Assembly (NCBI GenBank): GCA_002269645.1
Contig: NIVC01002898.1
Location: 62,001 to 126,000, forward strand
Length of the DNA stretch: 64,000 nt
Source of the DNA: Macrostomum lignano
Taxonomy: Eukaryota
Reading direction: 5' to 3'
A program made the translations under genes and the position numbers. Each line of letters begins with the position of its first letter. Position 1 is the stretch's first letter. The notes beneath the pieces were generated by a model. That model saw only the letters and a program-made list of their open reading frames with translations, was not told the DNA's origin and did no database searches. Positions 29,333-64,000 of this stretch are shown here, piece after piece.

Positions 29333-32300
29333 ATGGCTCTTAACGTGAATCGCGAAATTAGCGACGACTTTTATCGCTACAAAATGCCCCGCCTGATTGC
29401 GAAAGTCGAAGGCAAAGGCAACGGCATTAAGACTGTCATTGTCAACATGCACGAGGTTGGCAAAGCGCTCTGCAGGCCGCCAATTTATCCAACTAAATAT
29501 TTCGGCGCCGAGCTGGGCGCCCAGACCCAGTTCGACCAGAAGAATGATCGCTATATTGTTAATGGGGCCCACGATGCCGAGAAGTTGCAGACTATTCTAG
29601 ATGGCTTTATTAAACGGTTTGTTGATTTTAATTATTGTTCTTGTTCAGGGAGGGGGTTGTAACTATTTTGGTTATCCTACTAAATCGGCCTTCACATTTT
29701 TATTCCCTAATAGTACAACAAATAGCATTTTTTGACTAGCACGCTTGTAATTCCTTTTGATTCTTAATTAGCATCTCAGTAATCCCCCTTGAAGACCTAA
29801 TTAGCATCTCAGTAATCCCCCTTGAGACCTAATTAGCATCTCAGTAATCCCCCTTGAAGACCTAATTAGCATCTCAGTAATTCCCCTTGAGACCTAATTA
29901 GCATCTCAGTAATCCCCCTTGAGACCTAATTAGCATCTCAGTAATCCCCCTTGAAGACCTAATTAGCATCTCAGTAATCCCCCTTGAAGACCTAATTAGC
30001 ATCTCAGTAATCCCCCTTGAGACCTAATTAGCATCTCAGTAATTCCCCTTGAGATCTAATTAGCATCTCAGTAATTCCCCTTGAAGACCTAATTAGCATC
30101 TCAGTAATTCCCCTTGAGACCTAATTAGCATCTCAGTAATCCCCCTTGAAGACCTAATTAGCATCTCAGTAATCCCCCTTGAGACCTAATTAGCATCTCA
30201 GTAATCCCCCTTGAAGACCTAATTAGCATCTCAGTAATCCCCCTTGAGACCTAATTAGCATCTCAGTAATTCCCCTTGAAGACCTAATTAGCATCTCAGT
30301 AATCCCCCTTGAAGACCTAATTAGCATCTCAGTAATCCCCCTTGAGACCTAATTAGCATCTCAGTAATCCCCCTTGAAGACCTAATTAGCATCTCAGTAA
30401 TCCCCCTTGAGACCTAATTAGCATCTCAGTAATCCCCCTTGAAGACCTAATTAGCATCTCAGTAATTCCCCTTGAGATCTAATTAGCATCTCAGTAATTC
30501 CCCTTGAAGACCTAATTAGCATCTCAGTAATTCCCATTGAAACCTAATTAGCATCTCAGTAATTCCACTTGAAGACCTAACTAATATCTTAGTAATTCCC
30601 CTTGAAGACCTAATTAGCATCTCAGTAATTCCCTTGAGCCTTAATTAGCATCTCAGTAATTCCCCTTGAGACCTAATTAGCATCTCAGTAATTCCCCAAG
30701 AGCCTTTAAGCCTCAGTATCTGCAACACTAAACGCTCCGTCCCCCCCGCCGCATCAAACAGCTACGTACTGTGCTCGGAGTGCGAGAACCCCGAGACCGA
30801 TCTGATTGTGAAGAGCCGCGGCAAGCAGGGCGAGCTGTACGCCAAATGCAAGGCCTGCGGCAGCACTGGCACCGTCGTGGACAACAGCCGCACCACCCAG
30901 TTCATTATTAAGAATCCGCCAGACGAGACCGGACTGGCCCTGGCCTCTAGCACCAAGTCTGGCGCCGGCGGCGGTAAAAAACAGCGCCGCGGAGGCGCCG
31001 GCGCCGACAAGCAGGCCGACCGCAGCCCGGAAGCCGGCAACAGCGACGAGAACGACGAGCAGCAGCAGAAGTTGATGGACGAAGAAGATGGCAACGAGAT
31101 TGGCGGCGACGGATTCGATAGCGACAACGGCGAGTGGGAAGACGGCCCCGTCGGCGTTGAAGAACGAGTCGAAGAGCTGCCGGAATCGATCCGGCGCCTG
31201 ATTGTCACCGAGGATCTGCTGCAGCTGACACCGCAGGATAGGGCTGATCGGTAGCGCCGCTTCTGCTATTTTTATTCTAACAAAAAAATTTTGTTAGAAG
31301 CCTGATTTTCGACATGCTAAAATCCCAATTTGACAAACCTAAATCCTAAAACTACAGTCGGGAAATCCCAATTCCACCATCCGGGAAATCCCAATTCCAC
31401 CATCCGGGAAATCTCAATTCCACCATCCGGGAAATCCCAATTCCACCATCCGGGAAATCCCAATTCCACCACCCGGGAAATCCTAATTCCACCACCCGGG
31501 AAATCCAAATTCCACTACCCGGGAAATCTCAATTCAACAATCCGGAAAATCCCCACCACCCAGGAAATCCCACTTCCACAATCCGGAAATTCCCAATTTC
31601 AAAATCTAAAAAATCCCAATTCAACCCATGCGGAAATCCTCAAAAAATCAAAATTCAGTCAGGTAGCGAATGCTTTTAACTACTAAGCTTGATAATTTCA
31701 ACTAAACCATACGAAGCAATGGTTACTAGTTGCTATCCGGAAGTGTTGTCCAATAAAACAAATTTAAGTAATCTTGATATTTCTGTGTTGCGTCAGTTAA
31801 CTGTGCCTTTTTGCCATTCGGAGCAAAATTTGTTCCGATTAGAGCAAGCTAAGAGCAAGCTTTTAGCTGACTGGATGATTGCCTGTCTCGACAAGAGACA
31901 AAACACTTCAGCAGTATTCGACTCCATGATTTATTACTTGGCTGGCTTTACTACTGATATTTCCCTCAGCTTTTTTCTCTGCAGTTAACATTTCCTAATA
32001 TGGTTGTGTAGCTGCTGTTATTATCTGACAGTTGAGATTGTTCATTAATTTATATTGGAATATAGCTTGAGCAGGGTTTCAACTGTTACATTGCGTATGC
32101 ATAGTAGGGACTCAAACTATCAAATGTTAAGCAGGATAAATTGAGCACCTATCTAATGGCGCCAGAATACGAGGTAAGCATCTGATAGCGCCAGAATGAG
32201 TCTCCAATGGCGCCAAAATGAGTCTCCGATGGCGCAAGACTGAGTATGCGATGGCGCCAAAATGAGTTTCCGATAGCGCCAGATTAAGCATCTAATGGCG

Positions 32301-35893: not shown

Positions 35894-38360
35894 GTCACTA
35901 AGTTCACAAACCATTGGGTCAGCAAGTTCACAAACCATTGGGTCAGCAAGTTCACAAACCATTGGGTCAGTGAGGTCACAAACCATTGGGTCAGTGAGGT
36001 CACAAACCATTGGGTCAGCAAGGTCACAAACCATTGGGTCAGTAAGTTCACAAACCATTGGTTCAGTGAGGTCACAAACCATTGGGTCAGTGAGGTCACA
36101 AACCATTGGGTCAGCAAGTTCACAAACCATTGGGTCAGTGAGGTCACAAACCATTGGGTCAGTGAGGTCACAAACCATTGGGTCAGCAAGGTCACAAACC
36201 ATTGGGTCAGTAAGTTCACAAACCATTGGGTCAGTGAGGTCACAAACCATTGGGTCAGTGAGGTCACAAACCATTGGGTCAGTGAGTTCACAAACCATTG
36301 GGTCAGTGAGTTCACAAACCATTGGGTCAGCAAGTTCACAAACCATTGGGTCAGCAAGTTCACAAACCATTGGGTCAGTGAGGTCACAAACCATTGGGTC
36401 AGTGAGGTCACAAACCATTGGGTCAGCAAGGTCACAAACCATTGGGTCAGTAAGTTCACAAACCATTGGGTCAGTGAGGTCACAAACCATTGGGTCAGTG
36501 AGGTCACAAACCATTGGGTCAGTAAGTTCACAAACCATTGGGTCAGTGAGGTCACAAACCATTGGGTCAGCAAGTTCACAAACCATTGGGTCAGTGAGTT
36601 CACAAACCATTGGGTCAGCAAGTTCACAAACCATTGGGTCAGCAAGTTCACAAACCATTGGGTCAGTGAGTTCACAAACCATTGGGTCAGTGAGTTCACA
36701 AACCATTGGGTCAGTGAGTTCACAAACCATTGGGTCAGAAAGTTCACAAACCATTGGGTCAGAAAGTTTACAAACCATTGGGTCAGCAAGTTCACAAACC
36801 ATTGGGTCAGCAAGTTCACAAACCATTGGGTCAGCAAGTTCACAAACCATTGGGTCAGCAAGTTCACAAACCATTGGGTCAGTGAGTTCACAAACCATTG
36901 GGTCAGTGAGGTCACAAACCATTGGGTCAGTGAGGTCACAAACCATTGGGTCAGTGAGGTCACAAACCATTGGGTCAGTGAGGTCACAAACCATTGGGTC
37001 AGCAAGGTCACAAACCATTGGGTCAGTAAGTTCACAAACCATTGGGTCAGTGAGGTCACAAACCATTGGGTCAGTGAGGTCACAAACCATTGGGTCAGTG
37101 AGTTCACAAACCATTGGGTCAGTGAGTTCACAAACCATTGGGTCAGCAAGTTCACAAACCATTGGGTCAGCAAGTTCACAAACCATTGGGTCAGTGAGTT
37201 CACAAACCATTGGGTCAGTGAGGTCACAAACCATTGCGTCAGTGAGGTCACAAACCATTGGGTCAGCAAGTTCACAAACCATTGGGTCAGCAAGTTCACA
37301 AACCATTGCGTCAGTGAGGTCACAAACCATTGGGTCAGCAAGTTCACAAACCATTGGGTCAGCAAGTTCACAAACCATTGGGTCAGCAAGTTCACAAACC
37401 ATTGGGTCAGCAAGTTCACAAACCATTGGGTCAGTGAGGTCACAAACCATTGGGTCAGAAAGTTCACCAACCATTGGGTCAGTGAGTTCACAAACCATTG
37501 GGTCAGTGAGTTCACAAACCATTGGGTCAGAAATTTTACAAACCATTGGGTCAGTGAGTTCACAAACCATTGGGTCAGTGAGTTCACAAACCATTGGGTC
37601 AGTGAGTTCACAAACCATTGGGTCAGAAATTTCACAAACCATTGGGTCAGTGAGTTCACAAACCATTGGGTCAGTGAGTTCACAAACCATTGGGTCAGTG
37701 AGTTCACAAACCATTGGGTCAGTGAGGTCATAAACCATTGGGTCAGTGAATTCACAAACCATTGGGTCAGCAAGTTCACAAACCATTGCGTCAGTGAGGT
37801 CACAAACCATTGGGTCAGCAAGTTCACAAACCATTGGGTCAGCAAGTTCACAAACCATTGGGTCAGCAAGTTCACAAACCATTGGGTCAGTGAGGTCACA
37901 AACCATTGGGTCAGCAAGGTCACAAACCATTGGGTCAGTAAGTTCACAAACCATTGGGTCAGTGAGGTCACAAACCATTGGGTCAGTGAGTTCACAAACC
38001 ATTGGGTCAGCAAGTTCACAAACCATTGGGTCAGTGAGTTCACAAACCATTGGGTCAGCAAGTTCACAAACCATTGGGTCAGCAAGTTCACAAACCATTG
38101 GGTCAGCAAGTTCACAAACCATTGGGTCAGTGAGGTCACAAACCATTGGGTCAGTGAGTTCACAAACCATTGGGTCAGCAAGTTCACAAACCATTGGGTC
38201 AGCAAGTTCACAAACCATTGGGTCAGCAAGTTCACAAACCATTGGGTCAGTGAGTTCACAAACCATTGGGTCAGCAAGTTCACAAACCATTGGGTCAGTG
38301 AGTTCACAAACCATTGGGTCAGCAAGTTCACAAACCATTGGGTCAGTAAGTTCACAAACC
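35894..38360. repeat. 24-bp satellite, ~103 units (CAAACCATTGGGTCAGNNAGKTCA)
   Basis: Period 24 (8-aa periodic translations in several frames). Variation is almost confined to three positions. Confidence 0.97.
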
Positions 38361-39009
38361 AGCAATGAAATTTTATTTCTTAATTTTGAAAAAGAAAATC
38401 ATGATCAAAATCAAGGACAAAAAATGAATTTTATTCTTTTGCGTGAGTTGCATTATCAAAGCCTATTATGACTTAACTTGTATGTATTGTACAGTAATTA
38501 ATGATTAATCACATAGGTAGGGTTTTACATCAATAGAAACAAACAGCATCAGAATACTGCAGGACCAGCCATTTTGCACTATGCGGAGATGCAGTTGTGA
38601 GCTGAATTATACAGCAATTAAAAGAATCCAGTTTGGCACACGCTAATTAAAGATACGTTAAAAAACGAATGTTGAATAGTAATTAGCATAAGACCATAAG
38701 TAGTGGGGTCTATACGGCTTCAATTTGATTAATCGCATAAGAGTGAGTACTAAAAGCTGGCTAAGACCTGCTTAGCGTGTGGACACGAGGCTAAGGTATT
38801 TTACATGCAATTAGTACATTTAAGTCTTGTAGAAATGTATCTACAGCCCTTAAAAGGGCCGCTTTACAACAGACATCAGTGTATTTTTGTTAGAAACTTG
38901 CGTAAAAATATTTCCTCATTGATTGATTTCTTATACTCGTATGGAAGCAGATCGTCTAGCAAAAATAACAGATACTAGTAGAACTACTAAATATACCACT
39001 CGCAATAGA

Positions 39010-39730
39010 AGGGAAAAATAGAGCGCCTACTGATCTTTCAGAAGTTGTCTTCTGCTCAGTGTAACTTACGAGCGTAATTTAAATGAAATGAAACAGCTAG
39101 AATTTCCTTTCTTTCCTCGGGGTTTTTTGTCGCCTCAGGAGCATATGGGGTTAAGAATGAGCAAGCATTTAATTCGATGTACACAAATGAACGCCAGACG
39201 GACGAAGCTCAGCCTAGGGGAAGGCCCTATCTAGCTCAGCCAATGAGAGAGAAGTAAGGAGAGAGAGATCAAAGTCAGACGAACGAAAATCAGCCTGGGA
39301 AAAGGCCCAATCTGGCTCAGCCAATGAGAGAGCAGTAAGGAGAGAGATCAAAGTCAGACGAACGAAAATCAGCCTGGGAAAAGGCCCAATCTGGCTCAGC
39401 CAATGAGAGAGCAGTAAGAAGAGAGATCAAAGTCAGACGAACGAAAATCAGCCTGGGAAAAGGCCCAATCTGGCTCAGCCAATGAGAGAGCAGTAAGGAG
39501 AGAGATCAAAGTCAGACGAACGAAAATCAGCCTGGGAAAAGGCCTAATCTGGCTCAGCCAATGAAAGAGCAGTAAGGAGAGAGGTCAAAGGCAGTTGTTT
39601 ATCGGCCTGGCTGGGGGCCACCCTTTTTCTCACTTGCCCACTGTGCACACGACCTAGATTTTGGGTTTTTTAAGCTTTCCTGCTACAATCTTCAGACTTC
39701 AGTCTGGAGTCGGTAGAACAGGATTTAATG
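39010..39730 (+). mobile_element. Dispersed LTR-like repeat with a 79-bp tandem CCAAT module (copy 2)
   Basis: About five 79-bp units (39223, 39304, 39383, 39462, 39541). Homologous flanks with 18440-19070. Confidence 0.75.
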
Positions 39731-40025: not shown

Positions 40026-40463
40026 TCACGAATCCCCTCCATCCTCTTCCCGATCGTGCTGCTGCTGTCCAAATCTGACGCCACGGCCTCCGCTAGCGAC
40101 TCCCCGATTCATATAGTAAGCCAGCATGGAGTACAGCAGCGGCATGCCCTGGCAGCTGGGATCTTCGCGCAAGTTCAACTCTCTGGACAGCAGGCTGCGA
40201 CTCAGCCGGGCCTGCGGTTGTCCGCTCTCGGCCGCCAGCACCGATGCCGCATTGGAGTACTCGTTGAACTCGAGGTATTCTCGAATTAATTCGTTAATCA
40301 GCAGGTTCTCGTTGGACAGTCCGGGTCGCTGCTGGCCAGACGGCCGCGGCTCCTCGAGAGAGCGATAGATCTCAGCCCTGAGACTGGCCCTGATGTCTTG
40401 CAGGACTCCACGCGATTCCAAATTCTCTTTCAATGCCGATTTCAATTCGTCAACGGATGCCAT
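40026..40463 (-). CDS. CEP20: Centrosomal protein 20 (FOPNL/FOR20), LisH domain, 145 aa, intronless
   Basis: MASVDELKSALKENLESRGVL..IRASLRAEIYRSL...LSNENLLINELIREYLEFNEY...ASVLAAESGQP...L.RELN...PLLYSML matches the FOR20 family pattern. Confidence 0.93.
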   Translation of the reverse strand: MASVDELKSALKENLESRGVLQDIRASLRAEIYRSLEEPRPSGQQRPGLSNENLLINELIREYLEFNEYSNAASVLAAESGQPQARLSRSLLSRELNLREDPSCQGMPLLYSMLAYYMNRGVASGGRGVRFGQQQHDREEDGGDS

Positions 40464-40946
40464 TTGATCAAGTGGGGGCTTTTTTGAGATTTTTATCTTT
40501 AAATAGCCTATTGCACTACAGAAACAAGTAAAAACGAGCGATTTTTATGGTCAAATTTGAAGATTAAAAAAACTAAAACTTTAAAAAGTAGCCTAAATTA
40601 AAGAAAAAACTCATAAACACGGATGATGTTGTACAAATCTGAAATAATTTTTCTCTCAGGTAATCTTTATTCGAGTTACATACTTACAAAACAAATTATT
40701 GTACAAATCAATTAGGCAATCTTTGCTAGACAGATATGCACGCATCATGGAATCATGCTTTGGCAGTGGCGCAGCTAAAAAGTATTTATTATTACTTATA
40801 TAACTTTCAGAGAAAAAATATTTGTGTACATGATTTTTGTTTTGTGGCTCTCGAAACTTAAACTGGATAGCTTATGTACTAACAGTAGTTAGTAACCTCA
40901 CTCAATTTAAACGAGTCCCTCTAATCAAAGAAGAGAATATAGATAG

Positions 40947-41382
<436 letters not shown>

Positions 41383-41698: not shown

Positions 41699-46449
<4,751 letters not shown>

Positions 46450-49250: not shown

Positions 49251-50829
49251 TTTAAAGTTTTTAATATGCCAAAAAATACTTATGTATGAATCAACCACAT
49301 AGTCTAGGTTAGCCATTTAACATGTACTGTTATGCTCAACTTTCAACCAGTATATATTGGAAAAAATATTAATTTGAAATATTAAAGACTCACACAGCTA
49401 GAGCCTATAGGTATCTATATTATATGGGGTGGATAGGCCCATTAGATTTTTAAATCTTGAAGTCAAAAAGCGTGCACATTTTGAAAATATTTCAGCAAGT
49501 CAAAGATGTAATAAAATTGATTCTGACTTTTCCTAAATTGAGTTTTGACATTGAAATTGAAATTTATAAATCAGAAATGAGCCTACAGTACATATTACAA
49601 TGCCTTGTCTACTGCCTACTCTATTCTATCATTAAATATATAGAAAATCACGAATCATTATATCCAATATCCATATTCATACACCAATTAGCGATAAAAG
49701 TGTGAGTTAGTACGTTAAAAATAGTCAACCGAATTAACATTTTAAGATAATTTCTACCTTCTTGGCTGGCTTCACGATTATATGAATCTATGCTAATCGT
49801 TATACCAACGTTAGGTTAGCAGGAGCAGCCCATGAACACTGCTGGCGCAACAGTCTGAACATATGAATACGAGTACACGTGTATGAAGCTTATCTGACTT
49901 TGATCTTTTAGACTCTTATCTAGTTGGACCAACCTAACCTCAGGCCTCTCTTCCTGAGACCTCGTCTATCGTTCGTCACCTTAACAACAAGGCTCGACCC
50001 TCGAGCCTGGACCAATTGAAAACAGCCGTATATACACGTTAGGCGGTATAGAACACGGCAAAAACCGCCTATAAGGCAGTCCGTATCATGCTATATGATA
50101 CAGTAGCATGCTATAGACCGCCTTTTTTATGCGCACAAGGGCCAAATATGGCACAAATTTGAACAGACGTTTTTGCTTATTTTTTAGTTCACTAATGCAA
50201 AGTAGGCCTAGCGATTTTACTAACCTACTACGCTACTATTCTCTAGTACAGTATTTTAGTGTCACTAGAATGCTAGATAAATATTAGGTCAGGATGACTT
50301 AGTTACAACTTACAAGTGTAAGTGTTAACATTTAACATTATTTTATGTAGGCCTACTAAGTACTAGCTGTTTATTATTTCCACAATATTAATAGGCCCAG
50401 CGAATTAATATTAGAACAGGAGGAGAACAATACGACTCGACTTAAAGTTCAATAAGTGAACTTGGATGGCGCTCAGTTTCAGTTTGTAGCTAGGCCTATG
50501 CACAATTTTGTAACTGAATGCAATAACTGTGTGACTAAGCTAGGCCTAGGGCTATATATTCAATATTCTTTTTTCTGAACCCTGAATCCTGAGTTTAGGA
50601 GAGAAACTATTTAGTAAAGCTAGCTATATTGATAGATATATTGAACAACCATAATTTAGGGTTCTAATATACTATACTAATAGCCTATTATATATATTCC
50701 ATAAATGGATATATTTTTTATTTTTTATTTTATTGATAAATTGGGTTCTATTCTACTATTTTATGTTATAGGTTGAGCCTGAAATTAGTATTTAGTATTT
50801 AGAGGTTCTATATTTTTTTTAACCTTCCC

Positions 50830-52860
50830 TTTCCCCATAACCTGCTAGCCTTCCCTACATGGTTACACCCTACTGCCCTTGCTTTACCATATCTTACCCT
50901 GATGGCCTTCCTACAACACTTGCTACCTTTTCTTATCAATACAAGCCTTTCCCATACCTTACTGCCCTTCATTGTCTTTTATGGGCCTTTTCCATACCCT
51001 GCTGTCTTTCACAAACCTTGCTGCTCTTCAATGTATCCTGCTTGGCCTTCATTGTATATTGTTGGCCTTCCCACATGGCCATACCTTGCTGGCTTTTCCC
51101 ATATCCTGCTAGCCTTCCCCACACCCTACTGTCTTTCCCCATACCCTGCTGTCTTTCCCCTACCCTGCTGTCCTTCCCCACACCCTTGCCAGCCTTCCTT
51201 ACTCCTTGCTAGATTTCCCCACACCCTGCCAGCTTCCCCACACCCTGCCAGCTTCCCCACATCCTGCTCGCCTTCCCTACTCCATGCTACCCTTCCCCAC
51301 ACCCTGCTGTCCTTCCCCACATCCTGCTGGCCTTCCCTACTCCCTGCTACCCTTCCCCACACCCTGCTGTCCTTCCCCATCAATGCAGGCCTTCCTCACT
51401 CCCTGCTGGCATTCCCCACACCCTGCCGGCCTTCCCCACATCCTGCTGGCCTTCCCTACTCCTTGCTACCCTTCCCCACACCCTGCCGGCCTTCCCCACA
51501 TCCTGCTGGCCTTCCCTACTCCCTGCTACCCTTCCCCACACCCTGCTGTCCTTCCCCACACCCTGCTTGTCTTCACTACCAATGCAGGCTTTCCCTACAC
51601 CCTGCTGTCCTTCCCCATACCCTGCTGTCTTTCCCCATACCCTGCTGTCTTTCCCCTACCCTGCTGTCCTTCCCCACACCCTGCCAGCCTTCCTTACTCC
51701 TTGCTGGCTTTCCCCACACCCTGCTGGCTTCCTCACATCCTGCTAGACTTCCCCACACCCTGCCAGCTTCCCCACATCCTGCTGGCCTTCCCTACTCCTT
51801 GCTACCCTTCCCCACACCCTGCCGGCCTTCCCCACACCCTGCTGGCTTTCCTTACTCCCTGCTACCCTTCCCCACACCCTGCCGGCCTTCCCCACACCCT
51901 GCTGGCTTTCCTTACTCCCTGCTACCCTTCCCCACACCCTGCTGTCCTTCCCCACACCCTGCTTGTCTTACACTACCAATGCAGGCTTTCCCTACACCCT
52001 GCTGTCCTTCCCCATCAATGCAGGCCTTCCTCACTCCCTGCTGGCATTCCCCACACCCTGCCGGCCTTCCCCACATCCTGCTGGCCTTCCCTACTCCTTG
52101 CTACCCTTCCCCACACCCTGCCGGCCTTCCCCACACCCTGCCGGCTTCCCCACTTCCTGCTGGCCTTCCCTACTCCCTGCTACCCTTCCCCACACCCTGC
52201 TGTCCTTCCTCACACCCTGCTGTCCTTCCCCACACCCTGCTAATCTTCACTACCAATGCAGGCTTTCCCTACACCTTGCTGTCCTTCCCCATCAATGCAG
52301 GCCTTTCCCACTCCCTTCTGGCATTCCCTACACCCTGCCGGCCTTCCCCACATCCTGCTACCCTTCCCCACACCCTGCCGGCCTTCCCCACCCCCTGCCG
52401 GCTTCCCCACTTCCTGCTGGCCTTCCCTACTCCCTGCTACCCTTCCCCACACCCTGCTGTCCTTCCCCACACCCTGCCAGCCTTCCCTACTGCTGGCCTT
52501 CCCTATTTCCTGCTACCCTTCCCCACACCCTGCCGGCCTTCCCCACACCCTGCTGGCCTTCCCCACACCCTGCCTGCTTCCCCTCATCCTGCTAGCCTTC
52601 CCTACTCCCTGCTACCCTTCCCCACACCCTGCCAGCCTTCTCTACTGCTGGCCTTCCCTATTTCCTGCTACCCTTCCCCACACCCTGCTGTCCTTCCCCA
52701 CACCCTGCCTGCCTTCCCTACTGCTGGCCTTCCCTATTTCCTGCTACCCTTCCCCACACCCTGCCGGCCTTCCCCATACCCTGCTGTCATTTCCCATACC
52801 CTGCCACTCTACCTCTCACAGGCTACCCCTCCCAGACAGCCCTCCCAGACAGCCCTCCTA
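50830..52860 (-). repeat. C-rich (inverted) copy of the arm minisatellite
   Basis: Reverse complement of the G-rich modules; the 50859-51212 translation is identical to that of 2440-2793 and 60736-61089. Confidence 0.95.
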
Positions 52861-54717
52861 GACAGCCCCTCCAGGCTAACCCGACTCTACCCCTCCCAGG
52901 CAGCCCTTCCGGGCTTCATCTCCCACTCAACCTCTTCCAGAAGCGGAGGACGATCGCAGGACTGTTTGCTGCCTGCCGCTTCAGCTGCAGTGACCGCCGG
53001 CTCAAGCGGAGGACGATCGCAGGACTGTCTGCTGCCTGCCGCTTCGGCTGCAGTGACCGCCGGCTCAAGCGGAGGACGATCGCTGCTCCGCGTGCTATCA
53101 TCTACTAGTGTTGTGAGTGCTAAGGGCGATCGAAGGACTAATGAAGAAGCATATTATCCGATTTCTTTTAGAGGAGATCTATGCCAGTTATTTATCTTCT
53201 CGTTTAATTAGCAGTGAGGAAAAAAAGACGACTATTATATGCTGCCGCTTATACACTCTACAATATCATCAGCAGAATACGTTAAATGAGGTCGTTTGAA
53301 ACAAGAGTACGTAGATGGTAAGATGGCATGTATTTAGCAGTTTAGCTTCTTCCTAGTGAAATCAGTGAATTGTGTTGGTCGCTTACAGAACCTATTCAGC
53401 TTCTCCGCTCATAGTCACTCCAGCATCAAGTGCTAACAATGCAGATTAGCTATGAACTGTATTGGAATGCTTTGCATCATGCATTTGCATTTTAAATACA
53501 AGGACTTTTTCTCTCGTTCATTGGCAGGTATCAAGATGAGACAAAGCAATGTGCATTATGCTGCTGCCTATTCATAGGACGCAGAGTGCACGCAGGATCC
53601 TCTGAGGTGAAAGAAGACGACGGTGACGACTACGACATGTATGACTATTCAGCCACATTGGACAGAAATTAGCTGTTAGCCGACGTAGCCGTATAAATGT
53701 TTGGTCACACTTCTCTGTGCCCGTGGCGTATAGAACATTTAATCCGTGACTTCTTTGCACTATTGCACTACCATCAAACGCTGACGCTCTTTTTCTCGCT
53801 CTGTAATGCTGTAACCAGTTTTTTGTCCCCCCTTGTCGAGTTTGAGAGAACTATGCAGCGCATTTTTTCGACAAGAGTTTTTCATTGTCTTTTGTCAATG
53901 TGCAGTTTTACGAGTACATGTATATACTTAACTGAGTATTGTAAACATGTGCCTCTAAAATAAAACAGACTTCACTGCTTTTAACTATGCTTTTTACGAT
54001 AATTCGCTCTGTCATGTCCTGAAACATTCCTGTTTTATCGAATTCTCTTTTGATGATGACACAAATATGGTCACAAAGAATAGTGGGAGGTAGAGCCATA
54101 TGGCGAGAGGTATAAAGTGATTTTACATGATTTTACATGATTTTACGAGAGGTATGATTTTACATTACAGTAGTCTCAATAGTTTATCTGCCCCTATTGG
54201 CCTCCCTTTCTCCTTCTCGCCCTCTGTCTCTGCAGCACCTGTTGGTTAAAAATTAGAGGAAAGCTCGGCAAGAAAAGCCTCTGTGGAAAAGTCTCGTGCT
54301 CTCATAGCCTGACATCCTGCCACTTTTTAAATAGCCATGACTTTCCTGGTACATGGACATTTACATACGTAAGTTGTTTCCATCGGATTGAGACATGATT
54401 TATAACTAGTATAGGTATATTAGTAATAGTAAATTCAGTCAGTCTTATCATATACGAGCAGTGGCGGATCTAGAATTTCATTTTGGGAGGGGGCGGTCCA
54501 AGTTTAGGAGGCCAACATGAGTAATGAGGGGCACCTATTATGAGGGGGTGCAAAAATGCTGTACTGCTGAAAATAACGAACGGGAAACACGGATTGCATG
54601 TTATTAATTTAAATACGTACGAGTATTTGATTTGAGAAGCACAATATATCGGGAAAAGTTTTGCCTTCTCTGTGACGTGCTTGGCAAGTGCACATGCACT
54701 AGCTACATGGGGGGGGG

Positions 54718-55048
54718 TTCATAAGACCGAAATTTCACAACGCCGAAACCATACTTCACAAGACCGATACTTCATAAGACCGAAATTTCACAACGCCGAA
54801 AGCTCAAAATGCAGGGCACTTCACAAGACAGAAACTTCATAAGACCGAAGTTTCACAACCCCAAAGCTTAAAATACTGGGCCCTTCACAAGACTTGCGAA
54901 CTTGCTGCCTTTTTTGCTGCCTCGTCGTTACCACGAAATACTTTTATTTGTAGTAACGAAGTTTGAACTTATGAAGTTTCGGTCTTGTGAAGTATGGTGT
55001 TTCGGCGTTGTGAAATTTCGGTCTTATGAAGTTTCGGTCTTGTGAAGG
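54718..55048. mobile_element. Small foldback element with inverted TTCATAAGACCGAAA/TTCACAACGCCGAAA arrays
   Basis: The left block (54718-54860) and right block (54965-55048) are reverse complements. No clean TSD. Confidence 0.7.
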
Positions 55049-55107
55049 ATCGTGCAGCAGTTTTTGGCGTTTTCGTCGTTCGGCGGAGTTTTAACAAAAG
55101 CTCTCAG

Positions 55108-55163
55108 CCAATCGGAAAATTCAGCGTGCGTTATAACAAATCGGCCGCGTGAGAGCTATAAAA
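55108..55163 (+). promoter_or_regulatory. Pol II core promoter-like CCAAT + TATA
   Basis: AGCCAATC (CCAAT 55108-55112) and TATAAAA (55157-55163). Confidence 0.55.
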
Positions 55164-57850
55164 GGCGGCAACTCTAACTGCGCTCGAAATATCTCCCGGT
55201 TTTTGTCCTTGCCAAGGCCTGGGGCGCTCAACTTGGCCTGATACTGCCTTCTGGCTCTTCCCCCTACGGTCCTGCCGATCTGATCCTCCTTCCCCCGGCA
55301 GTTTCGTCTTCAAAAGCTAAGTTCCCCCTGAGAAGCATCATCAATATCTCCCGGCAGTGATCTAAGAGTAGCAACGACAACCGGCAAGTGAGGAGCAACA
55401 GCGTCGCGCGTCAGTTAAGATCAGCAGCAGCATACCATCTGAGTGTTTCGGTCTCTGTGGATTCCTTGGCTACCGGCAGATAGGTCCTCCGATTAGTTGG
55501 GTGAGAGGCTCTTTTGACCTGCTTAACTGGGTGCACCCTTTGTCTAACCCCTTCCTAGGTAGTCTGATAGGATTTGCACTTTTGCTTACTTGCTTTTGTG
55601 TGCCAATCTCGAGGCAGAAGTGTTAGTTAATATTAAAAGTAGCCATTTGCTCTAACTCAATCTAAAGTGTTTAGGATTGCGGATTAAGTGAGAAAGTTAA
55701 ATCTGGAAGTTAAAGACTTGGCGTTTTCTTTATTTTTCGCAACGCCAGCTGAGATGAGCAGCTAAATCTAGAGGCAGAGGTCACAGTGGACCGGAAGCGG
55801 CACAGTTCCCAGTCAATCAGTCGATCTAAGAAATCATTATGTTAAGCATGCAAATTAAGTGCCAGACTGGCGCTTTCGCACTGTCTCAGGCAGCTAAGCG
55901 GCTAAAACGAGATAAATATTAGTCTGAAGGTCTCCAAAAGTGACAATACATCTACATCATCGCTATCTGTCGACGTGTTAACGCACATTTAGTTCCAAAA
56001 GCGTGCAGTTACGTGTACTTATACATGTACTTCTGGGAATTTGGTAATGAAATAGTACATTTGGTAGTGTATAAAGGCTCGCCAGTGCAAGAACCCCCTG
56101 CAAAAGTCCTCTGTCCCTGCATGGCCAATGCGATCTTAGTCCCAGCAGCGTCCGTTCTATTCGGCTATGACTTCGAGATTTAGACAGCTAAAAGACTAGA
56201 TGGCAGGTAAGTGCAGTGCCCCTCTAGTCGGAAGTCCGATTTCGATAGCTCCGGTTTGGTGAGCCGGGGCGCACGGACTGGTGGCAGCGGGTTAGTTAAT
56301 CTGCGGATTAGCTAATCTCTACCTTTCAAATTCTCCCTGCTTGTCTCTCGCTGTCTTCTCCTAGCTATAGGACCTTGCTGCTCGCCCACAATCTGGCTAC
56401 CATGGGGCTGACCATCTGACAGGAGTGAGAGGCCAGAGTTCTAAGTGATTCATTTCCGAATTCTGAGGCCCGAAGCTATATAAGCTTAGAAAGGCCGAAC
56501 CCATCAAATTGAAGAGAATGTCAGTTTTGATGAGCTACAGGTAAGTTTATCCCTTGCTCGAATTTCTACCGAGGAAAAAGCCTCTATTTACTACATAAGT
56601 GGCTACGTTTACACACAAGCCTTCCTTAGGCTCAACCTCAGGGATCTTAAGAGCATTTACATGTACATGGGCCCTCTCCGGGCATGCATGGCTGCTTCTC
56701 TCGCCACCGCTTCCTTCAGGGCCAGGTACTTGAGGAGCCGTGCGCGGTGCCCCAAGCTTTTCTGCCGCTCAACAGGCAGTAAAAATGCAGAACAATTTAT
56801 CTGCCACTACCCGGTCTTCACCACTCACTCACCCCGGCCCAACTCTCCGACGCTTGCAGGCCCGAGAGCATATCGATGCTCACCCGGTACCGCGCTGCAA
56901 GCGAGACCGACGCCCCCGGAGGGACATCACTTCGATGGAAGTCATTCATGGTCGCCAGAGGCTAGCGGAATTGGGCGGTCTTCTTCGCCTCCTGATTGCT
57001 GCATCCGCCGGATGATCTCCTCTGCAGCTAGGTCAAACATACTCGTGTGCATACTGGCACTAATCCATGATTGAACATACATGTAGGTGAAATACTTGCG
57101 TGAGTTGCGTCAGTGTCAATACGCTCTTGCTCCAAAATACTTGAGCTCTTGTGCTAATCTCCATTCTAGCCGTGCTTGCTTTTGCTAGTGCGAGCTTGTT
57201 CATGCAACCCAATTTTGGTGCTATTTTTAAGCCTAGCTTACTTGAGGTAGCAAATTAGCCAGACTATGTGGATAGTTTGCCATTAGCTAAGGATAGTTTA
57301 ACATTCTGAGCAGGATGAGAGACTTTTCAGGCCGCCGCGATCCGAAATTCAAACCGCGACTTGCAGTCTGGTCATTTCTTTTGCACGAACGAAATTTCTC
57401 AAATAAGTGTAACACAAAGTGAAAAAATTAGAAAACTACTTGGACGATTTGACCTTTCAAAACTGCACTAAAATGCGTGGCGCAACAGCCAAATTACCGG
57501 GTGACATCGGTCGAGAAAAAAGCTTTTTTATTTGTTATTCGGACAAAAAATAATTATAGCTCTCAATAAACGCAAAGGTAATGTGCCGCTTGGATAGAAA
57601 AACTTTATGCAGCTACGCAAAAACAACTGAAGTAATGCGCGCAACATAGAGCTGCCCGCAAAAACTTCAGCTACACAGCAACTACAAACCGCTGGTACAG
57701 GACTGCGCATCGCCAGGGTGTGAGTCCCACGAACACGCATCACTTCAGACAATCGTTCAGGAAATAAACATAGTTATTAAATAACCCTCACTTTGCCACT
57801 GTTCGTTAAGGTCGAAACGGAACCGGACTGGATGATAGCACGCGGAGCAG

Positions 57851-58320
57851 CGATCGTCCTCCGCTTGAGCCGGCGGTCACTGCAGCCGAAGCGGCAGGCA
57901 GCAGACAGTCCTGCGATCGTCCTCCGCTTGAGCCGGCGGTCACTGCAGCAAGCGGCAGGCAGCAGACAGTCCTGCGATCGTCCTCCGCTTGAGCCGGCGG
58001 TCACTGCAGCAAGCGGCAGGCAGCAGACAGTCCTGCGATCGTCCTCCGCTTGAGCCGGCGGTCACTGCAGCAAGCGGCAGGCAGCAGACAGTCCTGCGAT
58101 CGTCCTCCGCTTGAGCCGGCGGTCACTGCAGCAAGCGGCAGGCAGCAGACAGTCCTGCGATCGTCCTCCGCTTGAGCCGGCGGTCACTGCAGCAAGCGGC
58201 AGGCAGCAGACAGTCCTGCGATCGTCCTCCGCTTGAGCCGGCGGTCACTGCAGCAAGCGGCAGGCAGCAGACAGTCCTGCGATCGTCCTCCGCTTGAGCC
58301 AGTGGTCACTGCAGCCGTAG
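57851..58320 (+). repeat. 61-bp GC-rich tandem repeat at the inner end of the right arm
   Basis: CGATCG starts at 57851, 57914, 57975, 58036, 58097, 58158, 58219 and 58280. The left arm has only ~2.5 inverted 63-bp units (52942-53085). Confidence 0.95.
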
Positions 58321-58859
58321 CGGCAGCATTTATCGGATCCTTGCAAAATAGAATTTCTTTTCTGGCATTCCAAATCCCAAATGGCTTTCATAAACGCACA
58401 GTTCCCCGTTGGAAAGCCGAATACAAAGTGCGGCGTCAGCGTTAGCTGACTCGCATGTACGCACCTGAAATGGTAAGAGTGAAGCGTCTGAAGTAAATAA
58501 CGATGCATAGTGTTATATTTTTAAATAATACCGAAACGAAACAATCTTCTCAGTTTTGAACATAAATGGAGACAGTACTCAAGGGCACAGTGGGAGATAT
58601 CCTGGAAGTGGTTGCCATGGAAGGGGGAGCGCTGCCTGGGAGGGGTAGAGTGGGAGAGGAGCCCGAGAGGGGTAGCCTGGCAAGAGTAGCCAGGAAGGGT
58701 AGCCTGGGAGCGCTGTCTGGAAGAGGTTGAGTGGGAGATAAAGCCCGGAAGGGCTGCCTGGGAGGGGTAGAGTCCGGTTAGCCTGGAGGGGCTGTCTGGG
58801 AGGGCTGTCTGGGAGGGCTGTCTGGGAGGGCTGTCTGGGAGGGCTGTCTGGGAGGGGTA

Positions 58860-61130
58860 GCCTGTGAGAGGTAGAGTGGCAGGGTGTGGAAAATGACAGC
58901 AGGGTATGGGGAAGGCCGGCAGGGTGTGGGGAAGGGTAGCAGGAAATAGGGAAGGCCAGCAGTAGGGAAGGCAGGCAGGGTGTGGGGAAGGACAGCAGGG
59001 TGTGGGGAAGGGTAGCAGGGAGTAGAGAAGGTCAGCAGGATGTGGGGAAGCCGGCAGGGTGTGGGGAATGCCAGCAGGGAGTGAGGAAGGCCTGCATTGA
59101 TGGGGAAGGACAGCAGGGTGTGGGGAAGGGTAGCAGGGAGTAGGGAAGGCCAGCAGGATGTGGGGAAGGACAGCAGGGTGTGGGGAAGGTTAGCAGGGAG
59201 TAGGGAAGGCGAGCAGGATGTGGGGAAGGCCGGCAGGGTGTGGGGAAGGGTAGCAGGAAATAGGGAAGGCCGGCAGGATGTGGAGAAGCCGGCAGGATGT
59301 GGAGAAGTCGGCAGGGTGTGGGGAAGGGTAGCAGGGAGTAGGGAAGGCCAGCAGGAAGTGGGGAAGCCGGCAGGGTGTGGGGAAGGCCGGCAGGGTGTGG
59401 GGAAGGGTAGCAGGAAAAAGGGAAGGCCAGCAGTAGGGAAGGCTGACAGGGTGTGGGGAAGCCGGCAGGGTGTGGGGAAGGGTAGCAGGGAGTAGAGAAG
59501 GTCAGCAGGATGTGGGGAAGCCGGCAGGGTGTGGGGAAGGCCGGCAGGGTGTGGGGAATGCCAGCAGGGAGTGAGGAAGGCCTGCATTGATGGGGAAGGA
59601 CAGCAGGGTGTGGGGAAGGGTAGCAGGAAATAGGGAAGGCCAGCAGTAGAGAAGGCTGGCAGGGTGTGGGGAAGGGTAGCAGGGAGTAGGGAAGTCCAGC
59701 AGGAAGTGGGGAAGCCGGCAGGGTGTGGGGAAGGGTAGCAGGGAGTAGGGAAGGCCAGCAGGAAGTGGGGAAGCCGGCAGGGTGTGGGGAAGGCCGGCAG
59801 GGTGTGGGGAAGGGTAGCAGGAAAAAGGGAAGGCCAGCAGTAGGGAAGGCTGACAGGGTGTGGGGAAGCCGGCAGGGTGTGGGGAAGGCCGGCAGGGTGT
59901 GGGGAAGGGTAGCAGGAAATAGGGAAGGCCAGCAGTAGGGAAGGCAGGCAGGGTGTGGGAAGGACAGCAGGGTGTGGGGAATGCCAGCAGGGAGTGAGGA
60001 AGGCCTGCATTGATGGGGAAGGACAGCAGGGTGTGGGGAAGGGTAGCAGGGAGTAGGGAAGGCCAGCAGGATGTGGGGAAGGACAGCAGGGTGTGGGGAA
60101 GGGTAGCAGGGAGTAAGGAAAGCCAGCAGGGTGTGCGGAAGGCCGGCAGGGTGTGGGGAAGGGTAGCAAGGAGTAGGGAAGGCCAGCAGGATGTGGGGAA
60201 GCTGGCAGGGTGTGGGGAAGTCTAGCAGGATGTGAGGAAGCCAGCAGGGTGTGGGGAAAGCCAGCAAGGAGTAAGGAAGGCTGGCAGGGTGTGGGGAAGG
60301 ACAGCAGGGTAGGGGAAAGACAGCAGGGTATGGGGAAGGACAGCAGGGTGTAGGGAAAGCCTGCATTGGTAGTGAAGACAAGCAGGGTGTGGGGAAGGAC
60401 AGCAGGGTGTGGGGAAGGGTAGCAGGGAGTAGGGAAGGCCAGCAGGATGTGGGGAAGGCCGGCAGGGTGTGGGGAAGGGTAGCAAGGAGTAGGGAAGGCC
60501 AGCAGGATGTGGGGAAGGCCGGCAGGGTGTGGGGAATGCCAGCAGGGAGTGAGGAAGGCCTGCATTGATGGGGAAGGACAGCAGGGTGTGGGGAAGGGTA
60601 GCAGGGAGTAGGGAAGGCCAGCAGGATGTGGGGAAGGACAGCAGGGTGTGGGGAAGGGTAGCATGGAGTAGGGAAGGCGAGCAGGATGTGGGGAAGCTGG
60701 CAGGGTGTGGGGAAGCTGGCAGGGTGTGGGGAAATCTAGCAAGGAGTAAGGAAGGCTGGCAAGGGTGTGGGGAAGGACAGCAGGGTAGGGGAAAGACAGC
60801 AGGGTATGGGGAAAGACAGTAGGGTGTGGGGAAGGCTAGCAGGATATGGGAAAAGCCAGCAAGGTATGGCCATGTGGGAAGGCCAACAATATACAATGAA
60901 GGCCAAGCAGGATACATTGAAGAGCAGCAAGGTTTGTGAAAGACAGCAGGGTATGGAAAAGGCCCATAAAAGACAATGAAGGGCAGTAAGGTATGGGAAA
61001 GGCTTGTATTGATAAGAAAAGGTAGCAAGTGTTGTAGGAAGGCCATCAGGGTAAGATATGGTAAAGCAAGGGCAGTAGGGTGTAACCATGTAGGGAAGGC
61101 TAGCAGGTTATGGGGAAAGGGAAGGTTAAA
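58860..61130 (+). repeat. G-rich composite minisatellite of the right arm
   Basis: Same modules and near-identical variant order as 560-2830. Confidence 0.95.
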
Positions 61131-64000
61131 AAAAATATAGAACCTCTAAATACTAAATACTAATTTCAGGCTCAACCTATAACATAAAATAGTAGAATAG
61201 AACCCAATTTATCAATAAAATAAAAAATAAAAAATACATCCATTTATGGAATATATATAATAGGCTATTAGTATAGTATATTAGAACCCTAAATTATGGT
61301 TGTTCAATATATCTATCAATATAGCTAGCTTTACTAAATAGTTTCTCTCCTAAACTCAGGATTCAGGGTTCAGAAAAAAGAATATTGAATATATAGCCCT
61401 AGGCCTAGCTTAGTCACACAGTTATTGCATTCAGTTACAAAATTGTGCATAGGCCTAGCTACAAACTGAAACTGAGCGCCATCCAAGTTCACTTATTGAA
61501 CTTTAAGTCGAGTCGTATTGTTCTCCTCCTGTTCTAATATTAATTCGCTGGGCCTATTAATATTGTGGAAATAATAAACAGCTAGTACTTAGTAGGCCTA
61601 CATAAAATAATGTTAAATGTTAACACTTACACTTGTAAGTTGTAACTAAGTCATCCTGACCTAATATTTATCTAGCATTCTAGTGACACTAAAATACTGT
61701 ACTAGAGAATAGTAGCGTAGTAGGTTAGTAAAATCGCTAGGCCTACTTTGCATTAGTGAACTAAAAAATAAGCAAAAACGTCTGTTCAAATTTGTGCCAT
61801 ATTTGGCCCTTGTGCGCATAAAAAAGGCGGTCTATAGCATGCTACTGTATCATATAGCATGATACGGACTGCCTTATAGGCGGTTTTTGCCGTGTTCTAT
61901 ACCGCCTAACGTGTATATACGGGTGTTGAAAAGTATAATCTTTAATTCTGCTTTAAAAATAGCATATGAAACAAATAAAATCGTACTACTTTATTAGGTA
62001 ATATTAATTTATTCACAAAAGCAATAGTTCCTAACTTAAAATATTTGAAAACGGAATTTAACATTAGGATGAAAATCTGTAAATTTAAATTTTTTGTTAT
62101 AGCTTATAAAAATCCGGTATAGGTTGATAATGTACGCAATTCACAATTCAAAAACAATTTACTCGTATTTTCGTATCCCCGTTAATTCTAATATCCGCAT
62201 AGATTAAGGAAGGTTAGTCTTCGAGTCTTTTTCAGCTCTCTTTCGTCTGCATTGGCTCGCATATTATGTAGATCCACCAAAAAATTAACCTTACATGTAG
62301 TTGCTGGACTCCTCCGGGTTGGTCGTCGGTCTCGAGTGTGCTCGCTCCTCCTCCGCACCCCCACCCCCCGCGGATTCCGGCCCGGCAACGTGCTGGGCAC
62401 ATTAATATTTCTAGCTCCGGTTTGAATGGCCTCTCACCTGCCGAATCGATGGTATATAGCTACTATACTAGTACTGTAGTCTTGTCACACTTAAATTGCT
62501 TTTTACAGTGGGCTTCCGTTGTTTCATTTATTCGCTCTATATTTCTTCAATTGTGCCACTTTTTTATATTTGAGCCGGCCTCTTCTAACATTGTGTGTTA
62601 ATTTTGCTTGGCTTGGCTACATGTAATTTTGCTTCGTGGCCCTTTCGTATGACTTTTTAATTATACGGATATACGGATATATGCATGAATTTAGAGTTAC
62701 TTAAAGCGGCTTGTTTTAGCGGGGGCAATGTTTCTAAGAGCTGACAGAAACTTGCACAGGTAAAAACATTGATAAGTTCATCAGCTAAGGTTTGTTGAGT
62801 TTTGTTTGAACTGCGAGATACATGTCGTAGTTGTTAGGTCAATCCTATTTTTCATCCTTTTATTCTGTATTATTTTCGTACGAAGTTACATGTATATTGT
62901 AGGGAGCTGACAGAATTCCAGATGCAGTTCTCTGAAGAAAAACTTGTAACAAAACGTGTGGCTAGCGTTTGAAAAAAAAGTGATAGAATTGCCTTCTAAA
63001 ATTTCGCTGTCGGTTTCAATATTGATATTTGATTATATGGACATGAAATATGAGCGTATGCATGCGGTTTTCAGCTTTCAGTTTGCATGGTGTTAGCGAA
63101 TCAGCTCATCATCACCGAGATTAAAGAAAATCTTTAAATCCTGAACTCTAAAGCACTTAGGTAGGAAATCAAAATGACACATTGCGAGCCAATTTAGACA
63201 GAACTGTCTCGGTTGAATTCATTCCTTAGGCCGTTTTTATGTGCTTGAGCCTTGACACATTTGATGCAAAAATTATCCTGGGTGATGGCATGGACTCGGC
63301 TTGTATTCTTAAATTAGGCATGCTCTGTCCAATAGGCCAGCGCGTGCACAAACGTGCACAAAGCTAGCGACACCATGCTCAGCGGTTGGTGTGCAGACAC
63401 TTCTGCTGCTGCTGATGCTAATGCTCAATTAAGGTGTGACAGAGCCCAAAAAATAGCTTTTTTGTTAGTTAAGGTCATTTGTCAATTACGTAGTTAAACA
63501 GGAACTCACTCAGTAGCAGATAACAGATTTAGTTTGTCTCGCAATTGTTATGCTAGTTTAGTTTGCGAGTAGCCAACGAACGTCCCAGGTAGAGAAAAAA
63601 GAGGGAGATATATCCCACTAGGCATCAATTTCACTATATTTAATAGCTCAGCTGCATGTTTAGGTCAAGTGCGAATGTACGGCAGGATGAGGTGCGAGGT
63701 GGGGTGATCAATGTCAGAGGGGATGGGCAGACTGGGAGGGTTGGGGTAATGGCGCCAGAGAAAAAGGGCCGATAGCACAATACCCCTCCCAAAGTCATAA
63801 AAACAAAGACTGAATGAAATCGACAAAAATGCATTTAATGGAGTTCGTAATACGAAAATAAGAGAAAAGGATGCGGTTACTGAAAACGCGAGAACAAGGA
63901 TGAAGAGCGCTACGCAAAAAAATCGCAAAAATGTTCTTATTGAACGACACAAACTTGTTATAAAAGTAAACTAAAAATTAGGTATTTTGTAGTTCAGGTC

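What the first reader, a model, noticed from the sequence alone, without database searches (positions are those of the whole stretch)
50016..61932. 11.9-kb Galileo-like giant foldback transposon with 3-4 kb minisatellite-built inverted arms
Seen: two multi-kb inverted arms, each with an AT-rich terminal block, a G-rich minisatellite, a 13-bp array and a 61/63-bp repeat, flank a 4.7-kb spacer. The ends are CA...TG and are bounded by a 7-bp direct repeat TTGAAAA. The terminus is confirmed independently by where the copy at 1-3629 diverges. A subterminal hairpin TAGGCGGT-N16-ACCGCCTA lies near each end. Established: long TIRs with internal tandem repeats plus a 7-bp TSD define Drosophila Galileo (P superfamily), which causes inversions by ectopic recombination. 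Inference: a non-autonomous Galileo-like family with unusually long arms, acting as a vehicle that spreads minisatellites and cargo. I do not know of a description in this lineage.
Basis: partly seen in the sequence, partly recalled or inferred. Interest (0 to 1): 0.85.

Follow-up and report, generated by a model that had tools for sequence, protein, structure and literature searches.

The report
Young 11.9-kb foldback DNA transposon
This is a real, very recently inserted 11.9-kb "foldback" DNA transposon in an unidentified animal genome, with 3-4 kb inverted arms made mostly of tandem repeats and no transposase gene: a clean new member of a known kind of mobile element, not a new kind.

Summary
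An 11,903-bp element lies at 50023-61925. It has inverted arms of 3,080 and 4,095 bp around a 4,728-bp non-coding spacer. It ends in CA...TG and is flanked by an exact 7-bp direct repeat, TTGAAAA (chance about 1e-4). A third arm copy at 1-3629 differs from the right arm by two 1-nt indels and stops at exactly the same terminal base before a different flank. The outer 1,588 bp of the two arms differ at 2 positions. Further in, they differ only by repeat-unit gains and losses. The element holds no Pfam domain, THAP signature, Rfam family or tRNA, so it is non-autonomous. The best reading is a young foldback-type cut-and-paste transposon, moved in trans by an unknown transposase, that copies its minisatellites when it moves. 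The "Galileo-like / P superfamily" label rests on a single 7-bp duplication plus CA...TG ends. It is the most compatible superfamily but is unproven: no transposase was found, the duplicated site does not fit Galileo's GTANTAC preference, and Mutator-type foldbacks are not excluded. The host genome and its close relatives are absent from the searchable collections, so a genome-wide census was impossible. Interest is moderate to low.

The parts
50016..50022 (.). Left copy of the 7-bp target-site duplication TTGAAAA
   Evidence: Only a length of 7 gives identical sequence abutting both ends. Chance is about 1e-4.
50023..53102 (+). Left arm (3,080 bp), terminus 5'-CAGCCGTATATACACG
   Evidence: I1: 1,616 nt about 100% complementary; 92% over 2.8 kb; inner boundary and indel map.
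50023..50830 (+). AT-rich unique terminal block of the left arm. It carries three AGGCGGT/ACCGCCT motifs within 105 bp of the end and 4 copies of TAGGCCTA.
50040..50071 (+). Subterminal hairpin TAGGCGGT-N16-ACCGCCTA, a candidate transposase-binding site
   Evidence: sequence; motif concentrated in the termini. In one search the terminal 120 nt fold only modestly better than shuffles (z = -2.2).
50831..52805 (+). 20-bp minisatellite, C-rich on the + strand (unit CCACACCCTGCTGGCCTTCC). Units nearest the terminus are degenerate.
   Evidence: 51079-52804, 87.6 copies; GC skew -0.6.
52826..52872 (+). Short 13-bp array (about 3.5 units, reverse complement of GGGCTGTCTGGGA)
   Evidence: (sequence).
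52941..53083 (+). 63-bp repeat, 2.3 units
53103..57830 (.). Unique non-coding spacer (4,728 bp). No transposase, no THAP signature, no Rfam family, and no other copy in the window.
57831..61925 (-). Right arm (4,095 bp), terminus (reverse complement) 5'-CACCCGTATATACACG
57850..58315 (-). 61-bp repeat, 7.6 units. The innermost unit is of the 63-bp type found in the left arm.
58326..58710 (-). About 385 bp present in the right arm (and in the copy at 1-3629) but missing from the left arm
58789..58856 (-). 13-bp array GGGCTGTCTGGGA, 5.2 perfect units
58879..61117 (-). 20-bp minisatellite, G-rich on the + strand (unit GCAGGGTGTGGGGAAGGCCA, about 102 units plus degenerate units)
61118..61925 (-). 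AT-rich terminal block of the right arm
   Evidence: 2 differences from the left block.
61926..61932 (.). Right copy of the target-site duplication TTGAAAA
1..3629 (-). Third arm copy, of the right-arm type, cut by the window start. It ends at the same terminal base and is followed by the different flank CAGAATG.
   Evidence: 99.945% over 3,631 bp; only two 1-nt G indels.

Best explanation
This is a young, non-autonomous, foldback-type class II (cut-and-paste) DNA transposon.

Shown:
- The 11.9-kb unit (arm, spacer, arm) inserted as one piece into an AT-rich intergenic site and duplicated 7 bp of target.
- A near-identical arm copy 46 kb away ends at the same nucleotide in a different flank, so the family has been mobile very recently.

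Inferred:
- A transposase encoded elsewhere recognises the terminal sequence of about 16 bp and the cluster of AGGCGGT motifs in the first 105 bp. It synapses the two ends and makes target cuts staggered by 7 nt.
- The arms are ordinary terminal inverted repeats that grew to 3-4 kb through expansion of internal tandem arrays. The arrays now change independently by unit gain and loss.
- Each transposition copies these arrays to a new locus, so the element seeds minisatellites.
- The transposase superfamily is unknown. P is the most compatible with a 7-bp duplication and CA...TG ends, at roughly 0.35-0.4 within this explanation.
For: - Exact 7-bp direct repeat abutting both termini, and only at length 7 (chance about 1e-4).
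- Termini complementary except at position 3, and the outer 1,588 bp of the arms differ at 2 sites.
- The independent copy 1-3629 ends at the same base with a different flank and differs from the right arm by two 1-nt indels.
- The terminal 24-mer occurs only at the three termini, with 0 expected by chance.
- 9 of 11 AGGCGGT sites in the window lie within 105 bp of the termini.
- The arms differ only by repeat-unit-scale indels, array copy number and one deletion of about 385 bp. Real tandem-repeat turnover would produce this, and an assembly palindrome would not.
- The spacer lacks any Pfam or Rfam hit and any THAP C2CH signature.
- Literature: foldback elements have composite repeat-built arms, non-coding middle domains and target-site duplications. 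Galileo makes 7-bp duplications.
Against: - Only one complete copy, and therefore one target-site duplication, could be examined.
- No transposase and no autonomous relative was found.
- The genome is not in any searchable collection, so copy number, other duplications and empty sites are untested.
- The copy at 1-3629 is truncated by the window, so it may be a solo arm.
- TTGAAAA does not fit Galileo's GTANTAC target preference.
Confidence: 0.85

Rival explanations
1. Same foldback transposon, but mobilised by a Mutator/Phantom (MuDR)-type transposase, like Drosophila FB, Tetris and nematode Tm1, rather than by a P-type enzyme.
For: - Most foldback elements with a known transposase fall in Mutator.
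- They share repeat-built composite arms and non-coding middle domains.
- MuDR/IS256 duplications are reported to range from 4 to 10 bp.
Against: - Documented foldback and Mutator families give 8-10 bp duplications, mostly 9.
- Here the duplication is exactly 7 bp, and lengths 8-12 fail.
Confidence: 0.25
2. The structure is not one mobile unit. Either two separate arm-type elements inserted head to head around 4.7 kb of host DNA, or a local inverted duplication arose, and the 7-bp flanks match by chance.
For: - The arm at 1-3629 shows that arms exist away from this pair.
- The spacer is unique in the window.
Against: - The chance of a 7-bp match at the two fixed outer ends is about 1e-4.
- The inner arm boundaries (53102/53103 and 57830/57831) carry no terminal motif and no duplication of their own: TACTAGT and CGGACTG against TTGAAAA.
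- The terminal 24-mer occurs only at the outer ends.
Confidence: 0.05
3. Assembly artefact: a palindromic or chimeric long-read join, or a collapsed or duplicated repeat.
For: - 1.6 kb of near-perfect inverted identity.
- A 3.6-kb copy whose only differences are two homopolymer-type indels.
Against: - The arms are asymmetric in a biologically structured way: unit-scale indels, 2.3 versus 7.6 units, and a 385-bp segment in one arm only.
- They enclose a unique 4.7-kb spacer.
- They are bounded by a precise duplication. Artefactual fold-backs are symmetric about a point and have no target-site duplication.
Confidence: 0.03

Closest known systems
Galileo (P superfamily foldback-like transposon of Drosophilidae)
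   Same: - Long inverted arms with internal tandem repeats whose copy number differs between the two arms of one element.
- A 7-bp target-site duplication.
- Many non-autonomous two-arm copies.
- Transposase-binding sites tens of bp in from the end.
   Different: - Arms here are 3.1-4.1 kb, against 0.5-1.2 kb, and hold four different arrays.
- The duplicated site TTGAAAA does not fit GTANTAC.
- No P/THAP transposase remnant is present.
- The host is a non-drosophilid metazoan of unknown identity.
- Similarity to Galileo's conserved 40-bp ends could not be tested, because no Galileo sequence was available.
Drosophila Foldback (FB), Tetris, and nematode Tm1 (Mutator/Phantom-associated foldback elements)
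   Same: - Composite arms with an outer unique domain, tandem-repeat domains and an inner domain.
- Arms of unequal length within one element.
- A non-coding middle domain.
- Arrays that can seed satellite or minisatellite DNA.
   Different: These families make 8-10 bp (mostly 9 bp) duplications. Here the duplication is 7 bp. No MULE/FLYWCH transposase could be looked for.
Sea urchin TU elements (recalled from memory: Liebermann, Hoffman-Liebermann et al., 1980s; not checked here)
   Same: A marine-invertebrate foldback transposon with long modular inverted arms containing short tandem repeats and a variable middle segment.
   Different: As I recall, TU elements give 8-bp duplications and have shorter arms. 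This is a lead only, and no sequence or paper was available to test it.

Membership tests
Foldback-type transposons (structural class) | Long terminal inverted repeats composed largely of tandem repeats, often unequal between the two ends | tested here: met
   arms of 3,080 and 4,095 bp, about 65% tandem arrays, differing by unit-scale indels.
Foldback-type transposons (structural class) | Flanking target-site duplication and precise termini shared by independent copies | tested here: met
   TTGAAAA on both sides, and the copy at 1-3629 ends at the same base.
Foldback-type transposons (structural class) | Middle domain variable and commonly without coding capacity | tested here: met
   no domain, RNA family or THAP signature in 53103-57830.
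P superfamily / Galileo | Transposase with an N-terminal THAP domain and a P-type RNase H-like catalytic domain, in autonomous relatives | not testable with these tools
   This copy has none. The host genome is absent from the collections, so autonomous relatives could not be sought.
P superfamily / Galileo | 7-bp (sometimes 8-bp) target-site duplication | tested here: met
   exactly 7 bp, but from a single insertion.
P superfamily / Galileo | Target preference GTANTAC within a 15-bp palindromic motif (Galileo) | tested here: not met
   The duplicated site is TTGAAAA, and the context CCAA-TTGAAAA-GTAT is not palindromic. One site is weak evidence.
P superfamily / Galileo | Conserved terminal sequence of about 40 bp shared among Galileo subfamilies | not tested
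   No Galileo sequence was available. The figures in the papers are not held.
Mutator/Phantom foldbacks (FB, Tetris, Tm1) | 8-10 bp (typically 9 bp) target-site duplication | tested here: not met
   lengths 8-12 give no flanking repeat. The MuDR/IS256 range of 4-10 bp keeps this family open.
hAT | 8-bp duplication and 5'-YARNG termini | tested here: not met
   The duplication is 7 bp. The termini are CAGCC and CACCC. The YARNG rule is from my own knowledge.
Dada | Insertion into small RNA genes, no terminal inverted repeats, 6-7 bp duplication | tested here: not met
   The element has kb-long inverted repeats. The target is AT-rich non-genic DNA with no tRNA or Rfam hit.
Transib / RAG-like | 5-bp duplication with CAC... 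termini | tested here: not met
   The duplication is 7 bp, and only one end starts with CAC. The criterion is from my own knowledge.

The most novel reading that the evidence does not exclude
The element belongs to a currently active P-superfamily foldback family outside Drosophilidae. It would be a Galileo analogue in a slowly evolving marine-type metazoan, with the longest arms known for that superfamily. It would disperse G-rich minisatellites across the genome and supply multi-kb inverted and direct repeats for inversions and deletions. The copy at 1-3629 and the right arm already form a 58-kb direct-repeat pair.
Probability: 0.3. Interest if true: 0.55.

Novelty: new member of a known kind. 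Interest (0 to 1): 0.35.

Why it matters
If this family is active, as the near-identical copies and the intact duplication suggest, it would be a usable example of three things.
- How inverted-repeat arms grow by tandem-repeat expansion.
- How minisatellites are spread by transposition in a genome that is visibly full of them.
- Where kb-scale inverted and direct repeats able to drive rearrangements come from.

Finding its transposase would also show whether the foldback form arose in yet another lineage of the P superfamily or of Mutator. As it stands, this is a well-preserved specimen of a known class. It does not open a new question.

Tried and rejected
**Identifying the host and finding more copies**
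- Exact-protein look-ups of a host ORF and of an arm ORF found nothing.
- Three protein-database searches gave no self hit and no close relative. The MFS exon gave no hits. The FYVE exon gave a best identity of 46%. The eIF5 N-terminus was 79-81% identical to teleosts and a horseshoe crab.
- Contigs carrying the best FYVE hits come from unnamed sequencing runs and gave no information.
- Two metagenome scans, with the terminal 24-mer and the commonest minisatellite 24-mer, each found 0.
- The host is therefore only "a metazoan", and no genome-wide census was possible.

**Coding and RNA content**
- Pfam on all spacer reading frames of about 70 aa or more (E up to 1) gave nothing.
- Rfam at gathering threshold and at E up to 1 gave only a sub-threshold mir-2 match, treated as chance.
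- ARAGORN found no tRNA.
- A THAP C2CH regex over six frames found no hit in the element.

**TAGGCCTA as an element-specific binding motif**
- This idea is rejected as specific. The motif is also 10 times over-represented in the rest of the window, although it is denser in the arms.

**Other paired inverted repeats**
- A search around the other TAGGCCTA clusters found none.

**Strength of the terminal hairpin**
- The terminal 120 nt fold only modestly better than shuffles (z = -2.2). The motif cluster is the stronger signal.

**Papers**
- The Marzo 2008, Casals 2005 and Feschotte & Pritham 2007 papers are not held.
Full report

Yes, at the stated coordinates.

The sequence reads ...gaccaaTTGAAAA|CAGCCGTATATACACGTTAGGCGGT... 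at 50016-50047. At 61901-61932 it reads ...ACCGCCTAACGTGTATATACGGGTG|TTGAAAAgtataat.... The element is therefore 50023-61925, 11,903 bp. It ends in CA...TG and is flanked by an exact 7-bp direct repeat.

Among flank lengths 1-12, only 7 gives a repeat that abuts both ends. Two 7-mers drawn from the non-repetitive part of this window, or from the 500-bp flanks, are identical with probability about 1.0-1.1e-4.

The right terminus is fixed independently. A third copy at 1-3629 matches 58295-61925 at 99.945%, with only two single-G indels. It stops at the same nucleotide (...CGGGTG) and continues into unrelated sequence (CAGAATG...). The terminal 24-mer occurs only at these three ends, even with 3 mismatches allowed, against 0 expected by chance.

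**2. Anatomy**

Boundaries and sizes:

| Part | Coordinates | Size |
|---|---|---|
| Left arm | 50023-53102 | 3,080 bp |
| Spacer | 53103-57830 | 4,728 bp |
| Right arm | 57831-61925 | 4,095 bp |

Reading inward from the terminus, each arm contains:
- An AT-rich unique block of about 808 bp.
- A 20-bp minisatellite, GCAGGGTGTGGGGAAGGCCA, with a 59-60-bp higher order and GC skew of about ±0.6. The G-rich strand runs 5'→3' towards the terminus. The units nearest the terminus are degenerate.
- A 13-bp array, GGGCTGTCTGGGA.
- Remnants of a 41-bp repeat.
- A 63/61-bp repeat.

How the two arms compare:
- The outer 1,588 bp differ at two positions only. One is position 3 of the terminus (G versus C). 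The other is 50711/61237.
- Further in, they differ by indels of 16-114 bp that track the repeat units.
- They also differ in array copy number: 2.3 units of 63 bp on the left, and 7.6 units on the right, mostly a 61-bp variant.
- A segment of about 385 bp (58326-58710) is present only in the right arm.
- The copy at 1-3629 is of the right-arm type throughout.

The first 105 bp of each end carry three copies of AGGCGGT/ACCGCCT. Two of them form the hairpin TAGGCGGT-N16-ACCGCCTA. Nine of the eleven occurrences of this heptamer in the 64-kb window lie in these terminal segments.

**3. Coding capacity**

The spacer and arms contain no Pfam domain at E up to 1. They contain no Rfam family, no tRNA and no THAP-type C2CH signature in any frame. 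The long "ORFs" in the arms are translations of the minisatellite. The spacer has no other copy in the window. The element is non-autonomous.

**4. Surroundings and host**

The window is from an animal. It carries these genes:

| Gene | Coordinates | Evidence |
|---|---|---|
| ZFYVE1/DFCP1-like (B-box, P-loop, two FYVE exons) | 9.4-17.9 kb, + strand | |
| eIF5 | 29.3-34.9 kb, + strand | |
| FOP/LisH (FOPNL-like) exon | 40026-40463, - strand | |
| MFS transporter | 43.1-46.5 kb, - strand | |

The element sits in AT-rich DNA about 3.5 kb upstream of the MFS gene.

The species could not be identified:
- No self hits or close relatives exist in the protein collection.
- Exact look-ups failed.
- Two metagenome scans were empty.

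**5. What it is and how it works**

The evidence points to a single insertion of a cut-and-paste DNA transposon, and the family has moved very recently. Four observations support this:
- Precise, shared termini.
- A 7-bp duplication.
- Near-perfect outer arm identity.
- A practically identical arm copy 46 kb away.

The architecture is that of foldback elements: a unique outer domain, tandem-repeat domains and a non-coding middle. Galileo, FB, Tetris and Tm1 are all described this way.

The following steps are inferred, not shown:
- A trans-acting transposase binds the terminal sequence and the AGGCGGT cluster. By analogy, P and Galileo THAP sites lie about 40-70 bp from the ends.
- It pairs the ends and integrates with a 7-nt stagger.
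- The arms lengthened by tandem-array expansion, and they now evolve independently by unit gain and loss.
- Each transposition copies the arrays to a new locus.

The copy at 1-3629 matches the right arm and not the left. This fits copying of the whole asymmetric unit, and it predicts what should lie upstream of the window.

**6. Comparison with known families**

*Working like an X.* It works like a non-autonomous foldback transposon.

*Being a member of X.* The P superfamily and Galileo are defined by the transposase, which is not available here.
- The 7-bp duplication (n = 1) and the CA...TG ends are compatible with P.
- The site TTGAAAA does not fit Galileo's GTANTAC preference.
- The arms are 3-8 times longer than Galileo's 0.5-1.2 kb.

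Foldback structure is convergent. Most classified cases are Mutator/Phantom with 8-10 bp duplications. That criterion is not met here, although MuDR/IS256 duplications are reported to span 4-10 bp.

On their defining features, three other superfamilies are excluded:
- hAT (8-bp duplication, YARNG termini).
- Dada (no inverted repeats, targets small RNA genes).
- Transib (5-bp duplication).

I therefore file the element as a foldback-type transposon of undetermined superfamily. P is the leading candidate at about 0.35-0.4, and Mutator is second at about 0.25.

**7. Rivals to the transposon reading**

*Two independent arm insertions, or a local inverted duplication.* This requires a 1e-4 coincidence. 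It is also contradicted by the absence of terminal motifs or duplications at the inner arm boundaries.

*Assembly palindrome.* This is contradicted by the structured asymmetry of the arms, the unique spacer and the duplication.

**8. Novelty and score**

This is a clean, apparently recently active foldback element with unusually long, multi-array arms in a non-model metazoan. It is a new member of a known kind. Its family assignment and its interest score of 0.85 are too strong for the evidence. My interest score is 0.35. It would rise to about 0.55 if a P-type transposase with these termini is found outside Drosophilidae.

Noticed in passing
window 3104-61745 (22 sites; for example 3948, 5921, 6092, 24660, 24720, 25213, 25699, 28061, 28282, 46903): The 8-bp palindrome TAGGCCTA occurs 22 times, against 1.1 expected. 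Twelve sites are in the three arm copies, and ten are scattered in AT-rich non-coding DNA elsewhere. Outside the element, 10 of 18 AGGCCT sites are flanked by T...A. It looks like a genome-wide motif of unknown meaning.
   Followed up: partly
window 54700-55056 (inside the spacer): A miniature foldback of about 350 bp. It has inverted arms built from 16-bp tandem units (ACTTCAYAAGACCGAA), up to 54 nt at 94% complementary, around a loop of about 100-200 bp. It may be a nested foldback MITE. Its ends and duplication were not resolved.
   Followed up: partly
window 55100-55170: A CCAAT box (cagCCAATcgg) followed about 45 bp later by TATAAAAGG in the spacer. Downstream there are ATG...GTAAGT motifs resembling first exons (about 56195-56210 and 56518-56545). 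This could be a captured promoter or 5' gene fragment, but nothing matched any database.
   Followed up: no
window 10984-11646 and 33419-34425: The same 28-31-bp minisatellite (GGCCCAGCAACTGAGAATCTGGGA...) lies in inverted orientation 22 kb apart, at 84-87% identity. One array is inside the ZFYVE1-like gene and the other inside the eIF5 gene. Only the arrays are shared, not their flanks.
   Followed up: partly
window 18449-18914 and 39019-39594: A second dispersed repeat family. About 185 bp of unique sequence (79% identical between the copies) is followed by a 74-79-bp tandem array containing CCAAT-like motifs, in direct orientation 20 kb apart. It may be another minisatellite-carrying mobile element.
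   Followed up: partly
window 35894-38361; also 29765-30697, 41994-43047, 45422-46027, 12119-12466, 15976-16434: The minisatellite density is very high. One example is 103 copies of a 24-bp unit at 93% identity. Several hundred-bp to kb arrays lie in introns and intergenic DNA. About a quarter of the window is tandem repeat.
   Followed up: no
window 6867-7289 (-) and 27183-27467 (-): Decayed mariner-like remnants. The first has a weak Mos1 HTH_48 match (E = 0.011, below threshold). The second resembles a mariner HTH region by eye but gave no Pfam hit.
   Followed up: partly
window 40939-41382 and 43310-43680: Long (ATAG)n/(AGAC)n and (GACA)n microsatellites lie within or near the MFS transporter gene and share 88-92% identity with each other.
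   Followed up: no
window 9434-17945 and 29321-34907: A ZFYVE1-like gene and eIF5 are neighbours here. From memory, both human orthologues are on chromosome 14. This hints at conserved deuterostome-type synteny, but the host was not identified.
   Followed up: no
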